Assembly: GCA_001949185.1 (NCBI GenBank)
Contig: BDGG01000001.1
Location: forward strand, 3,489,324-3,553,323
Source: Ramazzottius varieornatus
Lineage: Eukaryota > Animalia > Tardigrada
Length of the DNA: 64,000 nt
Reading direction: 5' to 3'
Positions 48,245-52,349 of this stretch are shown here, one piece after another (within the stretch, counting starts at the first letter, position 1; the number at the start of each line of letters is the position of its first letter). Position numbers and translations under genes: made by a program. The notes beneath the pieces were generated by a model. That model was not told where the DNA came from. It saw only the letters and a list, made by a program, of their open reading frames with translations, and made no database searches.

Positions 48245-48815
48245 CTCGCACGGTTAACCAAGAGGTACTCTTCCTTCATCCGGAAGTCAAACGTTCCCGC
48301 GCCCCGGCAACAGGTATTGAGCAAACGAAGAGAAGGCATAGCTTGTATCAGCGACGCATCCCATGTGCAATATACCGTATTCTAAATAGCAGAGCGTACA
48401 TACTGTAGATCTGACAGAAGTGTCGGATGGCTGGACGCGTACATTAGTACTGCTTCCGCTTCCGCTTGAAACCGGTCTGCTGTCACCGCTCTTGCCAACT
48501 GACGATCAGATTTCGGGTCCTGGTTCACGCTTTTCGGAATCTGTCTTGCACGGTACCTTTAATCACTACGCATTAGCCACAAGTGCAATCGTTCTTACAG
48601 GAAACTAGACGTCGTCCCTCGTTGACCCATCGGCCTGGATAAAGAAACAAAATTTAATGGTGAAGCGTTCATCGCATTTCTTTATACACGTGATTAGATT
48701 AACGCAATATGGACGACTGCATGTTGAACAGTTTTAGCAGTAAAACAAAAAGAATCATGATAAAAAAAGATCTACCGTACTTTCTTTGGCAGAGTTACCG
48801 TGAGCAAACACAAAA

Positions 48816-51800
48816 CTAATACTTTCGTTTCTTGGCAGAGCTGTTAGGATTTTCTTTCTCGAATTCCTCTTGGTAGTCTTGCATTAAATCTGATGCGTTT
48901 CCCAAGTCTCTCTCCCGGTCTGTTTCTTGAGCAGGATTCTTATCGGTGAGCTTGACATCTGCAATGTGCCACCCTAGTGCTTCCATGTCTTCCTCTAACA
49001 GCCGGCGCGCTTCGGAAATGATTGCTGTGGCGGCATCGACTTCGTTTAACGGCTCAAGACCATTCAGTAGAATATTCCTCCAACCGGCGCGAGGTTTCTC
49101 TGACTCGTGCGTTTTCTCGCTAAGATAAGAATGAATCATAGAACTATCTTTAACCTTGAATCGTAAGGACATCAAACCAGTACACCGTATCAAGACTGAC
49201 CTCTGGAACGGGACCGAGCTTCTCAAGAGCTCTTCGATATGAGAGCGATCCGCCGCCGCCAGTTGTGCCGGGTTCTTGTAACCCTTTGAATACAGCAGAC
49301 GGGCTTGACGAGCCGTAAGGAACTGTATACGGACCAGTTCGACAAGCTCACGCTGAACACCAAACAAAAGTCGACCTTGAAGCTGTTCGATGAGCACGGC
49401 TAGGTTGGTCCATCCAAGCTCTTCGCAAAATATGGTGATCATACCTAACAAACACCACAGTTCAGCCCACAGTATTCCCAAAAGCAGCATGAATTCGCTC
49501 TGGTCTCTCCTATCACGTCTACATCCATGGAACTGATGGCCTAGTAATGCTCGTGTTAGCTAAGACGGCACAAACCGGAATACGAGGAAGCTCCTTGCTG
49601 TAATGCTTGTAGCATTCCCTTGTTGACACCGTACTTCATTACCACCGTGCTCAGTGGAACTTCGTGAATCAATTCGTTCAGGATCAGTGCACTGAAAACC
49701 AAAGGAGATAATATACCGTCACTGAAATAATTAAAGTCGAAACGTCATGCTTACCAATAGAATCTGCGAAGGTTTGTAGCTTGCTGGACGATCGTCGCAT
49801 CCGTGTCACTGTTCAACTTCCCTCGTACCGCGCTAGCCAGTATTTTCTCCTCCACTCCCACTATGGTACCTACTCTCTTCCACGACTCGGGCAGCTTCTC
49901 CCACAGCATCATGTACTGGTACCAGTCCAGGTCCGCTACATGTTCGAGCAGGTTCAGCGGAGTTAGGAGGTGAAGTATGTGCAGATCGGTCTCCAGGTTG
50001 AACGACAGACGAGCTCGCTGGAGTTCCTGAAAGACAGCTTCACCATCTGAAGGCGAGAGACCTGACCATACAACTGCGTTTCCCAACTGAGATGGTCGAA
50101 GGGATTCTCCGTCTTGCCCAATGTGGATTAGTTCTTTAGCTTTAAGCGAGTCGACGACGGATTTTGAGTACGCTTCCGTCTGACTTTCTCCCTAATAACA
50201 CATAACATTTTTCAAGATTCGATAGAAATTCCTCAGAATATTTGAAAATCAGTATGGACATTTTTGGAAACGGAAACTAACCAGTTGGGCCGAGAACAGG
50301 GTGCACTGGAAATACTCCGTGACTTGTTGGATACTTTTGGCTGCGCCATTCACGATAATCTCGAGTGCAGCTTGCATCAGCTTTCCATCGACCTGGTTGT
50401 TCTTAACGGCTGCCAGCATGCAGCTCTCAACTGACCGAATCGACGCGGCGAACAGTGCGGCAACCTGGGGTCTTTCCGCCTCTTTACAGATCAAGATACT
50501 TTCTCCTGCAAGCAAAATCAAGAAAAGTATTATATTCTAAAGGGGGTCTTGTGCAATACTGTTACCTTCGGTGTCGACTCCTTTTCGACCAGCGCGTCCA
50601 GCCATTTGATAGTACGTAAGGACGTCAATTACAGCTCTGTGGAAGATGGGAGACCGAATGATGACGCGTCGAGCTGGGAGGTTGACACCTGCGGCCAAAG
50701 TGGTCGTGGCGATTAGGACCTTGATGTAGCCTTTGCGGAAAGCTCCTTCCACAATTTCTCGTTCGTCCATCGTCAAACCAGCGTGATGGAAGCTCACGCC
50801 CATCGGGACAGTCTTCTTCAGAACGTTGTCCAGACCGGCTGGACTCTTTCGCAATTGCGCTACCACATCGGCAACCTATACAGCAAACGAGACAAACACG
50901 AACCAGGAAGTTATGTGATAATGAGGCGAAACCGGAAGTAGTCCAATTACCAATACCTTTCCTTCTTGAATGAACTCGGCTCGAATCATCCTATCCAACT
51001 GAGAGAACTGCCCAGCGATAATCTGTGCCAGACTTTCACACCAGCTCTTATAGGGGCAAAAGATTAGGATACCATGACCAGCTCGAACTGTTTCAAGGCA
51101 CAGTGAGACGATGTGGTCGGGATCGTCTTTCAGCGGCGGAAAGGGAGTCACCGGGCGAACCTGGTTCCAAGTTTTGTCAAAGAGGGAAAGTCCGACCTTC
51201 ACTCTTTCGTACAACGGAATCGGCCGATAATCTAAAAGCAACCCCTAGACTGTTAAGTTTGTACTGCTGGAGGTCGGTGAAGTAATCTGGTATCTTACCG
51301 CTGATGAAAAGATCGGCTTTCAGCCAAGTCGCGATGTCACCCAAGTTAGGCAGCGTAGCACTCATCGCAACGATCTGGATATTCCCGGGAGCCAAAGAGC
51401 CCTCTACAACCATACCCTGGTTTTCCGCCGACTGCTGAGCTTTATTCAGGTACGACAGCTTGGTCAGCAGCAGCTCCATCAAATGTCCACGTCCCACATC
51501 GCCGATGATATGTAGCTCGTCCACCACCACAACGCCCAGTTGATCCAGCTTCCCTTCTTCCACCATCCGATTCACCAGACTGTTAGCTTTCTCAATTGTA
51601 CAAACGGCAATGTCCAATCTACGACATATCTTCATTTGGTTGGTAATATTTGAAGAAGACTTTGCTAGTACAACTAACCTTTTCATTCCGCCTTTCGGGC
51701 GAATTTGGCCCATGTATCCTCCAACACGAATTCCACTACCGTGAAGCATCTTCTGCAATGACAACATCTTCTCCCTGGCTAAAGACACGAACGGAAGAAT

Positions 51801-52349
51801 GAACAGCCCTTTCTTCCTAGTTTCTACCACTCGTTTCAATAGAAGAATCTCCGCCACGAGGGTCTTTCCGGCGCTGGTGGGTGCCGAGTAGACCAAGTTG
51901 CCTCCATACATTGCCTGGCCTTGCTTGAGGCAGTCGGCCTGCCATTGGAACATCGACGTGATGCTTAGCTTGCTGTAAGCGTTCACCACCTTACCGGGAA
52001 GATACCAGTCTGCTATATTCAGGGATGTTTCTGGCACGGCGGAAGTGTCTTGCTCCATATCGTCGAATAGCGAGTCAGGAATGTTCGATAGGATGTCATC
52101 AAAGAACGGCTCGATGTGATCACTGCGGAGCGTTGCCGCTGATACCGATCTTTTCAGCGGGATTTGGGTACTCTTTGGTGAGGTGGTAGAGTCTTCAATC
52201 TTTGTCAAAGCAATTACAGGTTGGTAGCGGGAGATGGACGCAGCTGCAGTATGGGACTTTGGCTGTCCACGTCCGACGGTCAGCGCTGGCCTTGGCGGTG
52301 TGTGAGGTAAGGTGATTCCGCTGCTCTGGATCCTCCTTGGTAGAGACAT
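48816..52349 (-). CDS. POLQ: DNA polymerase theta (POLQ/mus308)-type SF2 helicase, helicase module only, about 960 aa, about 9 exons
   Basis: [45 protein letters not shown] and QMAGRAGR. The POLQ-like C-terminal helicase segment [16 protein letters not shown]...ARLLYSKG...VPF...IISEARRLL is followed by SSAKKRKY*. Confidence 0.88.

What the first reader, a model, noticed from the sequence alone, without database searches (positions are those of the whole stretch)
48570..52349. Split DNA polymerase theta: a stand-alone POLQ helicase with no polymerase domain
Seen: the gene encodes a full SF2 helicase whose distal part follows POLQ rather than HELQ (FGVQREL..LVRI..L.A..AR.LY..G, then VPF, then a segment ending IISEARRLL). 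It then stops about 50 aa later at an NLS-like AKKRKY*. The next plausible acceptor (48634) hits a stop within about 20 codons in all three phases. Downstream lie only a 1.2-kb orphan gene and the convergent XBP1, and I see no A-family polymerase motifs anywhere in the window. Established: animal POLQ/mus308 is normally one polypeptide of helicase, central linker and A-family polymerase, and it drives theta-mediated end joining. Inference: this lineage has either fissioned Pol theta into two separately regulated genes (a two-component TMEJ machine) or kept a helicase-only paralogue. That would matter for an organism with unusual DNA-damage tolerance.
Basis: partly seen in the sequence, partly recalled or inferred. 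Interest (0 to 1): 0.85.

Follow-up and report, generated by a model that had tools for sequence, protein, structure and literature searches.

The report
Stand-alone Pol theta helicase paralogue
The tardigrade Ramazzottius varieornatus has a normal full-length DNA polymerase theta gene and also this second, expressed and conserved gene that encodes only the helicase half, so Pol theta is not split but has a stand-alone helicase twin in a genome without HELQ.

Summary
On the minus strand, window 52349-48816, a 9-exon gene encodes an intact 966-aa protein. It is identical to the annotated RvY_01215-1 of Ramazzottius varieornatus. Residues 109-915 match the whole human POLQ helicase-like domain (E 5.5e-243), and the protein ends in ...AKKRKY. 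Spliced RNA contigs from four studies confirm every intron and end about 160-195 nt after the stop, next to an ATTAAA signal. None splices on to polymerase exons.

The headline reading, a fission of Pol theta, does not hold. The only POLQ-type polymerase domain in the genome lies on contig C2, directly downstream of its own helicase and central region. That locus is colinear with the 2062-aa Hypsibius POLQ. The window gene is a helicase-only paralogue of it: 75% amino-acid identity, saturated synonymous sites, dN/dS below 0.07, and 18 of 19 strain differences synonymous. I found no HELQ.

Copy numbers (POLQ 2, HELQ 0) were tabulated in 2019, and the Hypsibius copy was labelled 'POLQ_Dpl' in 2024. 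I found no paper describing the helicase-only architecture. Hypsibius and Paramacrobiotus have the same short-plus-long pair. Each short copy groups with its own species' long copy. That means either gene conversion or three independent duplications, and I could not settle which.

The parts
48621..52647 (-). Approximate transcript of the helicase-only gene (RvY_01215), about 3.3 kb once spliced
   Evidence: RNA contigs of runs X1 and X4 (3281 and 3261 nt) lie from about 52640 down to 48621/48660.
52375..52450 (-). 5'UTR intron, 76 nt
   Evidence: A joint 52374/52451 is seen in X1 and X4. X9 and X11 show the same skip placed 6 nt further on.
51679..52349 (-). CDS exon 1. It holds the ATG at 52349, a poorly conserved N-terminal 108 aa, and the start of the DEAD domain with Walker A APTSAGKT at 51884-51861.
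51299..51618 (-). CDS exon 2, with DELH at 51521-51510 and SAT at 51362-51354. The intron before it (51619-51678, 60 nt) is absent from the C2 paralogue.
50957..51231 (-). CDS exon 3
50566..50875 (-). CDS exon 4 (Helicase_C), with motif [10 protein letters not shown] at 50701-50675 and motif [10 protein letters not shown] at 50608-50585. The intron before it (50876-50956) is absent from the C2 paralogue.
50282..50505 (-). CDS exon 5 (winged helix, HTH_61)
49755..50191 (-). CDS exon 6 (end of HTH_61 and start of POLQ_helical)
49576..49691 (-). CDS exon 7 (POLQ_helical). Retention of the following intron (49445-49575) gives the annotated 790-aa isoform RvY_01215-2.
49201..49444 (-). CDS exon 8 (end of POLQ_helical and DUF7898; holds [13 protein letters not shown] ... 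VPFQ)
48816..49119 (-). CDS exon 9. It holds the last helix of the helicase domain (IISEARRLL). Homology to POLQ ends at about 48936. A private 40-codon tail follows (48935-48819), ending in the NLS-like AKKRKY, with the stop at 48818-48816.
48653..48658 (-). ATTAAA polyadenylation-type signal just upstream of the contig ends

Best explanation
This is an intact, transcribed and selectively constrained gene (RvY_01215 of Ramazzottius varieornatus). It encodes only the helicase-like domain of DNA polymerase theta, plus a short N-terminal region and a 40-aa tail with an NLS-like KKRK. It is a DNA-level partial duplicate of the genome's full-length POLQ gene on contig C2, which keeps helicase, central region and A-family polymerase. 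Pol theta is therefore not split; it has gained a stand-alone helicase twin. Shown here: the architecture, the expression, the transcript end, the parentage, purifying selection, retention of all SF2 catalytic motifs, the absence of any HELQ gene, and the same short-plus-long pair in two other tardigrade genera. Inferred: the protein works as the isolated human Pol theta helicase domain does in vitro. That domain is an ssDNA-dependent ATPase that clears RPA and RAD51 from 3' overhangs and promotes annealing. Here the activity would be uncoupled from the polymerase and regulated separately. It may also cover part of the role of the missing HELQ.
For: Gene model and identity: the 966-aa model has no stops and equals P0488 exactly. 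All 8 introns, a 5'UTR intron and a 3' end at 48621-48660 are seen in spliced RNA contigs from four studies, with no onward splice.
POLQ type: the protein matches the whole human POLQ helicase domain at E 5.5e-243, against 1e-72 for Hel308. It is 47-49% identical to vertebrate POLQ and about 30% to archaeal Hel308.
Parentage: POLQ_helical and HTH_61 occur at only two loci in the genome, the window and C2. The two copies are 75% identical in protein and share six intron positions. The ML tree places the window gene as sister to the C2 helicase with 100/100 support, inside metazoan POLQ.
Full-length POLQ at C2: the locus is colinear with the 2062-aa P0278 from helicase to the polymerase end, and with P0178 through the central region. 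The polymerase exon's best solved match is the POLQ polymerase domain (2e-48, against 2e-24 for POLN). The only other DNA_pol_A locus, on C9, is POLG.
Selection: dN is 0.157 with saturated pS of 0.74, so omega is below 0.07. Of 19 coding differences in another strain's RNA, 18 are synonymous. Walker A, DELH, SAT and motif VI are intact. The short copy has changed no more strongly conserved columns than the long copy has.
No HELQ: the next-best helicase loci all carry Sec63 domains. Carrero 2019, Suppl. Table 2, gives HELQ 0 and POLQ 2.
Separate regulation in a relative: in Hypsibius the long gene BV898_12022 rises by log2 5.6 after irradiation. The short gene BV898_11575 ('POLQ_Dpl') rises by only log2 1.46 after bleomycin.
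Against: No biochemical or genetic data exist for this protein, so the mechanism is inferred by homology to the human domain. It rests on colinearity and on an unbroken chain of open frames with canonical splice options. The annotated Ramazzottius long protein (RvY_05862) never came up in three length-windowed protein searches. No HELQ sequence was available by reference, so the separation from HELQ is indirect. Expression level and damage response in Ramazzottius itself were not measured.
Confidence: 0.8

Rival explanations
1. True fission. Pol theta has been split into a helicase gene here and a polymerase-only gene elsewhere, forming a two-component TMEJ machine.
For: The window gene has no polymerase domain, and its mRNA ends soon after the helicase domain. 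The Ramazzottius and Paramacrobiotus long proteins with a complete polymerase domain did not appear in the protein searches.
Against: The only POLQ-type polymerase exons (C2) sit about 3 kb downstream of a second complete helicase domain on the same strand. Open frames between them are homologous to the central region of the single-protein models P0278 and P0178. There is no polymerase-only locus.
Confidence: 0.04
2. It is the tardigrade HELQ orthologue, the ancient helicase-only relative of POLQ.
For: The architecture is helicase-only. Motif V reads TLAAGVNLP, as in 72 of 80 archaeal Hel308.
Against: The gene is 75% identical to the same genome's POLQ helicase. It is nested inside metazoan POLQ, with plant TEBICHI outside that group. 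Its match to human POLQ helicase is 170 orders of magnitude better than its match to Hel308. It shares six intron positions with the C2 POLQ.
Confidence: 0.01
3. It is a decaying or functionless partial duplicate that merely happens to be transcribed.
For: It is a truncated copy, and its branch is 2-3 times longer than the long copy's. In Hypsibius the counterpart is expressed at a low level.
Against: Synonymous sites are saturated, yet the frame is open over 966 codons and omega is below 0.07. Of 19 strain differences, 18 are synonymous. The catalytic motifs are intact. The same architecture is kept in three genera.
Confidence: 0.03
4. Same gene, different mechanism. The short protein acts mainly by co-assembling with full-length Pol theta through the helicase-domain oligomer. 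It would tune or cap the number of polymerase arms per complex, as a regulatory or dominant-negative subunit, and would not act on DNA alone.
For: The helicase domain of human POLQ was solved as multi-chain assemblies (several chains per entry; that it oligomerises is from my own knowledge). In all three species the short copy stays closest in sequence to its own species' long copy. That is what co-assembly plus gene conversion or co-evolution would favour.
Against: There is no interaction evidence. A complex prediction was not run because two helicase domains exceed the tool's size limit. The intact ATPase motifs argue for an enzyme and not a mere plug.
Confidence: 0.2
5. Origin question, option A. 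One duplication in an early eutardigrade, after which whole-gene conversion against the parent POLQ erased orthology inside each lineage.
For: All three short copies keep the same architecture and end 8-40 aa after the same helix. The Ramazzottius and Hypsibius tails both end in a basic cluster followed by KY and the stop. Paralogue identity is alike in all three species, 71-75%.
Against: No site pattern groups the short copies across species: paralogue pattern 2-4 sites, cross pattern 1-5, species pattern 86-128. The AU test rejects a clade of short copies (p 2.6e-6). No recent conversion tract is visible in Ramazzottius. The loci lie on different scaffolds.
Confidence: 0.5
6. Origin question, option B. 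Three independent partial duplications of POLQ, one in each of the Ramazzottius, Hypsibius and Paramacrobiotus lineages.
For: This is the plain reading of the tree and the AU test. The N-terminal regions are also species-specific in length and sequence in both copies. The tails are not alignable.
Against: It needs the same segment, from the start codon to the end of the helicase domain, to be copied and fixed three times. No other partial copies exist in this genome.
Confidence: 0.45

Closest known systems
DNA polymerase theta (POLQ / Mus308 / TEBICHI), helicase-like domain
   Same: The full five-domain Hel308-type helicase module is present (DEAD, Helicase_C, winged helix, POLQ_helical ratchet, C-terminal helix-loop-helix). 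Residues 109-915 align end to end with human POLQ 68-895. The gene is nested within metazoan POLQ in the tree.
   Different: There is no central region and no A-family polymerase. The protein ends 59 aa after IISEARRLL with a private tail. Motif V reads LAAG where metazoan POLQ usually has LSSG.
HELQ (Hel308, Mus301, helq-1)
   Same: It is a stand-alone Hel308-family helicase with no polymerase. It is the only such stand-alone gene in a genome that lacks HELQ, so it may occupy a similar niche.
   Different: It is not an orthologue. It is a much younger offshoot of POLQ itself, 75% identical to the resident POLQ helicase. HELQ's partners, such as the RAD51 paralogues, were not examined.
Hypsibius exemplaris BV898_11575 ('POLQ_Dpl', OQV14220.1) and Paramacrobiotus metropolitanus LOC129590484 (XP_055341716.1)
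   Same: They have the same helicase-only architecture (1089 and 951 aa) beside a long POLQ. Motif V is likewise altered, to SV and SA.
   Different: By sequence, each is closest to its own species' long POLQ and not to the window gene (56% and 51% identity). Their tails differ.
Recombinant human Pol theta helicase construct (residues 1-894 or 67-894, e.g. PDB 5A9J, 5AGA, 8W0A)
   Same: The natural tardigrade protein covers almost exactly the fragment that biochemists cut out and study as an autonomous ATPase and annealing module.
   Different: That fragment is an artificial truncation of a single polypeptide. Here the fragment is a separate gene with its own transcript, as the RNA contigs show.

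Membership tests
POLQ helicase-like domain subfamily (Hel308-type SF2) | SF2 motifs I, II, III, V and VI are present | tested here: met
   [24 protein letters not shown] and QMAGRAGR are all present.
POLQ helicase-like domain subfamily (Hel308-type SF2) | Domain order DEAD, Helicase_C, winged helix (HTH_61), POLQ_helical, C-terminal HLH (DUF7898) | tested here: met
   All five Pfam families score above their cut-offs, in that order.
POLQ helicase-like domain subfamily (Hel308-type SF2) | Closer to POLQ than to other Hel308/Ski2 helicases, and inside the POLQ clade | tested here: met
   Solved structures: POLQ 5.5e-243, Hel308 1e-72, Brr2/ASCC3 about 1e-52. In the tree it is sister to the C2 POLQ at 100/100, within metazoan POLQ.
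Full-length DNA polymerase theta (POLQ) | C-terminal A-family polymerase domain on the same polypeptide | tested here: not met
   There is no PF00476 hit in the protein or the window. The transcript ends 160-195 nt after the stop.
Full-length DNA polymerase theta (POLQ) | Long central linker region | tested here: not met
   Homology to the C2 gene stops at about 48936. The remaining 40 codons score no better against the C2 central region than shuffled sequence does.
HELQ | Orthology to animal HELQ, as a clade separate from POLQ | tested here: inconclusive
   No HELQ sequence could be obtained by reference: none in the PDB copy and none among the named hits. Indirect evidence is strongly against membership, namely the sister relation to the species' own POLQ and the shared introns.
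HELQ | Helicase-only architecture | tested here: met
Functional (non-pseudogene) paralogue | Open frame, transcription, purifying selection | tested here: met
Active ssDNA-dependent ATPase / annealing motor | Enzymatic activity | not testable with these tools
   Only motif conservation could be checked.

The most novel reading that the evidence does not exclude
Eutardigrades run a two-tier Pol theta system. One tier is a strongly damage-induced full-length enzyme. The other is a separately regulated helicase-only subunit. The short copy is kept sequence-matched to the long one, by gene conversion or repeated re-duplication, because the two co-assemble through the helicase oligomer. This short copy has taken over the niche of the lost HELQ, with motif V drifting back towards the Hel308 type.
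Probability: 0.15. Interest if true: 0.75.

Novelty: new variant of a known kind. Interest (0 to 1): 0.45.

Why it matters
Pol theta's helicase and polymerase halves are almost always studied as one polypeptide. What the helicase does by itself in vivo is still debated. Tardigrades offer a natural experiment, because the helicase module is encoded as a free-standing, conserved and separately regulated gene beside the complete enzyme. This occurs in genomes that lack HELQ and, according to Carrero 2019, several recombination and Fanconi genes as well.

There is also a practical consequence. Tardigrade irradiation studies report 'POLQ' as one of the most induced genes. There are two genes with very different architecture and response, so reads, primers and RNAi reagents need to tell them apart.

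The species-wise clustering of the copies in three genera is a tidy case for testing concerted evolution against recurrent duplication. The finding does not show any link to radiation or desiccation tolerance.

Tried and rejected
1. Frameshift origin of the tail. The C2 sequence just after the helicase domain reads KKKRKQKRSLKLRY in another frame, which resembles the basic tails. However, window 48935-48600 aligns to the C2 central region no better than shuffled sequence does (score 21 against a mean of 22), so I dropped this idea.
2. Origin of the tail and 3'UTR. Both are unique in the genome at DNA and protein level, so no donor locus was found.
The supplementary tables of Anoud 2024 hold no rows for the neighbouring genes.
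4. An explicit tree with HELQ. No HELQ sequence was reachable: none in the PDB copy, and candidates of about 1100-1200 aa with AA in motif V turned out to be protist, plant or unnamed POLQ-like proteins.
5. The annotated Ramazzottius long POLQ protein was not retrieved by any of the three length-windowed searches.
6. Mosaic or recent gene conversion. Third-position identity is flat at 0.30-0.57 along the Ramazzottius pair. Amino-acid identity profiles show no clear tract.
7. Complex prediction was not used, because two helicase domains exceed 1000 residues and I make no binding claim.
8. Handling of the spliced model. Searches were run exon by exon by reference until the identical database protein P0488 became available by id.
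Full report
**What is in the window**

On the minus strand between 52349 and 48816 lies a nine-exon gene with eight GT-AG introns of 60-131 nt. I joined the exons only inside scripts, from the window file. The product is 966 aa without a stop.

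It later proved identical, residue for residue, to a database protein. That protein is P0488 = RvY_01215-1 (GAU88531.1) of Ramazzottius varieornatus. A second annotated isoform, RvY_01215-2 (790 aa), is the same gene with intron 7 retained. The genome size of 55.8 Mb in 200 contigs fits that species.

Until P0488 was available by id, I searched the model exon by exon by reference. No joined sequence was ever typed.

Pfam finds DEAD, Helicase_C, HTH_61, POLQ_helical and DUF7898 in that order, and no DNA_pol_A. Against solved structures, residues 109-915 align with residues 68-895 of the human POLQ helicase-like domain at E 5.5e-243. Archaeal Hel308 follows at 1e-72, and Brr2/ASCC3 at about 1e-52.

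The protein ends ...NSSAKKRKY, 59 aa after IISEARRLL. Walker A, DELH, SAT, motif V and motif VI are intact.

**The gene is expressed and its mRNA is helicase-only**

Assembled contigs from four runs in four studies (2016, 2021, 2022, 2023) skip exactly the eight predicted introns and a further 76-nt intron in the 5'UTR. They are therefore RNA. Three of the four end at 48621-48660, just past an ATTAAA at 48658-48653.

One contig runs on to 48197, into the start of the next gene on the same strand. No contig shows a joint out of the last exon. An assembly artefact at the 3' end is excluded, because the RNA contigs are colinear with the genome through the stop codon and the 3'UTR.

**Pol theta is not split**

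Three genome-wide searches bear on this:
- PF00476 (DNA_pol_A) hits two places. One is C9:588023, which is POLG. The other is C2:7377971-7379673, whose last exon matches the POLQ polymerase domain at 2e-48, against 2e-24 for POLN.
- POLQ_helical and HTH_61 each hit exactly two loci: the window gene and C2:7382832-7383939, just upstream of those polymerase exons on the same strand.
- The 2062-aa Hypsibius exemplaris POLQ (P0278, with helicase and PF00476 in one protein) aligns colinearly along C2 from 7385496 to 7377953.

The Paramacrobiotus long protein P0178 also aligns with C2. It covers the C2 helicase, the central open frames and the region just before the polymerase. Every gap between the C2 open frames can be bridged by canonical introns.

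The C2 locus is the place that Anoud et al. 2024 list as RvY_05862 on BDGG01000002, the best Ramazzottius hit to POLQ. Its continuity therefore rests on colinearity, which I rate at about 90%.

**Relation between the two genes**

The window protein is 75% identical to the C2 helicase domain, or 69% with the N-terminal region included. The N-termini are recognisably related from the first Met. DNA identity in exons is 69-77%.

Six intron positions are shared. The window gene has two private introns, and the C2 gene has one private N-terminal intron plus one GC-AG intron. The copy therefore arose by DNA duplication and not by retroposition.

Homology stops at about window 48936, after ...TDK. 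The C2 frame continues open into the central region. The window gene has 40 private codons that align to C2 no better than shuffled sequence does, and they occur nowhere else in the genome.

**The short copy is under selection**

Synonymous sites between the copies are saturated (pS 0.74) while dN is 0.157, so omega is below about 0.07. No tract shows raised third-position identity.

RNA contigs of runs X9 and X11 come from a strain about 1% different from the reference. Of the 19 coding differences listed, 18 are synonymous, including three in the private tail.

At columns conserved in at least 90% of the outgroups, the short copy has changed no more often than the long copy (19 against 17). 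In the tree its branch is 2-3 times longer than that of the long copy. This is a working gene that evolves somewhat faster than its parent.

**HELQ is absent**

Searching the whole genome with the 966-aa protein gives only the two loci as strong matches. The next three all carry Sec63 domains, so they are of the Brr2/ASCC3 type. Carrero et al. 2019 (PMC6797769, Suppl. Table 2) list these copy numbers for human / fly / R. varieornatus / H. dujardini:
- HELQ: 1 / 1 / 0 / 0
- POLN: 1 / 0 / 0 / 0
- POLQ: 1 / 1 / 2 / 2

I could not place an animal HELQ in a tree because no HELQ sequence was reachable by reference. The window gene nevertheless sits inside metazoan POLQ, with plant TEBICHI outside that group, and is sister to its own genome's POLQ. 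That is not where a HELQ orthologue could fall.

**Other tardigrades**

Hypsibius exemplaris has two genes:
- OQV13803.1 = BV898_12022, 2062 aa, full length.
- OQV14220.1 = BV898_11575, 1089 aa, helicase-only, ending ...SRKRSRSKTKLAKY.

Paramacrobiotus metropolitanus also has two:
- XP_055348119.1, 1478 aa. Its model stops at the start of the polymerase domain.
- XP_055341716.1, 951 aa, helicase-only.

In the supplementary tables of Anoud et al. 2024 (PMC11233135), BV898_12022 rises by log2 5.64 after irradiation and log2 4.11 after bleomycin. BV898_11575, labelled 'POLQ_Dpl', rises by log2 1.46 after bleomycin from a lower baseline. The main texts of the papers I read treat POLQ as one gene and do not mention the helicase-only architecture.

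**An unresolved pattern**

In ML trees each short copy is sister to the long copy of its own species, with 100/100 support three times over. The six tardigrade sequences form one clade. The AU test rejects a clade of the three short copies (delta lnL 598, p 2.6e-6). It also rejects a clade of the Ramazzottius and Hypsibius short copies (delta lnL 235, p 2.5e-6).

Site patterns agree with this. Species-wise patterns number 86-128. Paralogue-wise patterns number 2-4, and the noise control gives 1-5. N-terminal regions are also species-specific in both copies.

Yet all three short genes keep the same segment and end within 8-40 aa of the same helix. Paralogue identity is 71-75% in all three species. 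Either one old duplication was later homogenised by gene conversion in each lineage, or the same partial duplication happened three times. I put these near even odds.

The test would be intron positions and synteny of the short genes.

**One small functional hint**

Only one column separates all three short copies from all three long copies while the long copies keep the residue found in at least 75% of the outgroups. It is the second Ser of motif V:
- Long tardigrade copies, and 339 of about 380 fetched eukaryotic POLQ-like proteins: TLSSGVNLP.
- Short copies: AA (Ramazzottius), SV (Hypsibius), SA (Paramacrobiotus).
- Archaeal Hel308: AA in 72 of 80.

The chance of one such triple coincidence is roughly 0.01-0.05. 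I note it without building on it.

**How it most likely works**

Shown: a free-standing, catalytically complete Pol theta helicase module, with its own transcript and an NLS-like tail, beside a full-length POLQ and without HELQ.

Inferred from the known activities of the human helicase domain: it loads on 3' ssDNA, burns ATP, strips RPA and RAD51, and promotes annealing, feeding end-joining or annealing-type repair independently of the polymerase arm.

A second mechanism cannot be excluded. The short protein may co-assemble with full-length Pol theta through the helicase oligomer and so tune it. Nothing here links the gene to radiation or desiccation tolerance.

**Verdict**

Its headline interpretation, fission, is wrong, and its fallback, a helicase-only paralogue, is right.

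The gene is annotated. The copy number has been in the literature since 2019 and a 'duplicate' label since 2024. As far as I could find, three points are new:
- the explicit helicase-only architecture with transcript evidence;
- strong constraint on the short copy;
- recurrence in three genera with species-wise clustering.

The finding is of moderate interest.

**Earlier notes of this scan**

One note reports possible Pol theta/TMEJ microduplication scars elsewhere in this genome (s1-795717, not tested here). Another reports an XBP1 splice cassette in this window (s1-808375); I saw the bZIP region of that gene.

Noticed in passing
window 50675-50701 (motif V): The second Ser of motif V is replaced in all three tardigrade helicase-only copies (AA, SV, SA). 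The long tardigrade copies and about 89% of the fetched eukaryotic POLQ-like proteins have TLSSGVNLP. In archaeal Hel308, 72 of 80 have AA. This is the only column with that pattern.
   Followed up: partly
   Followed up: no
window 53751-54509 (-): A 252-aa ORF just upstream of the helicase gene has an extreme Asp/Tyr/Trp-rich C-terminal half (...DDWWWGSGSNHWGDEYWYDD...YYWNDDDWINWYYGEDGY...). I did not look up any family for it.
   Followed up: no
window 47159-48244 (-): Two ORFs (140 and 176 aa) lie downstream of the helicase gene and RNA contigs cover them; the 176-aa one (47714-48244) has no Pfam hit, and the 140-aa one was not scanned. One contig (X9) runs from the helicase 3'UTR past the next gene's ATG at 48244, which suggests read-through or overlapping UTRs.
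   Followed up: partly
window 49445-49575: Retention of intron 7 gives the annotated 790-aa isoform RvY_01215-2, which lacks the last third of the ratchet domain. The X11 contigs break at this intron.
   Followed up: partly
L014 / C2:7382909-7382986: The full-length POLQ gene has a GC-AG intron at the position homologous to window intron 7. It also has a private 72-nt intron in the N-terminal region that the window gene lacks.
   Followed up: partly
P0178 (Paramacrobiotus XP_055348119.1): The RefSeq model of the long Paramacrobiotus POLQ stops at the position equivalent to residue 1667 of the Hypsibius protein, just inside the polymerase domain. It is probably a truncated model. No Paramacrobiotus or Ramazzottius protein with a full polymerase domain appeared in the length-windowed searches.
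   Followed up: partly
P0004 cluster (Littorina saxatilis): Several 490-770 aa 'DNA polymerase theta-like' proteins occur on different contigs of a periwinkle genome. Copepod 'POLQ' models of about 1100 aa also lack PF00476. Short POLQ-derived helicase genes may exist outside tardigrades, or these may be split models.
   Followed up: no
runs X9 and X11 on window 47300-53000: RNA contigs labelled as the same organism differ from the reference by about 1%, with a 6-nt insertion at 48451. They probably come from another strain or population.
   Followed up: partly
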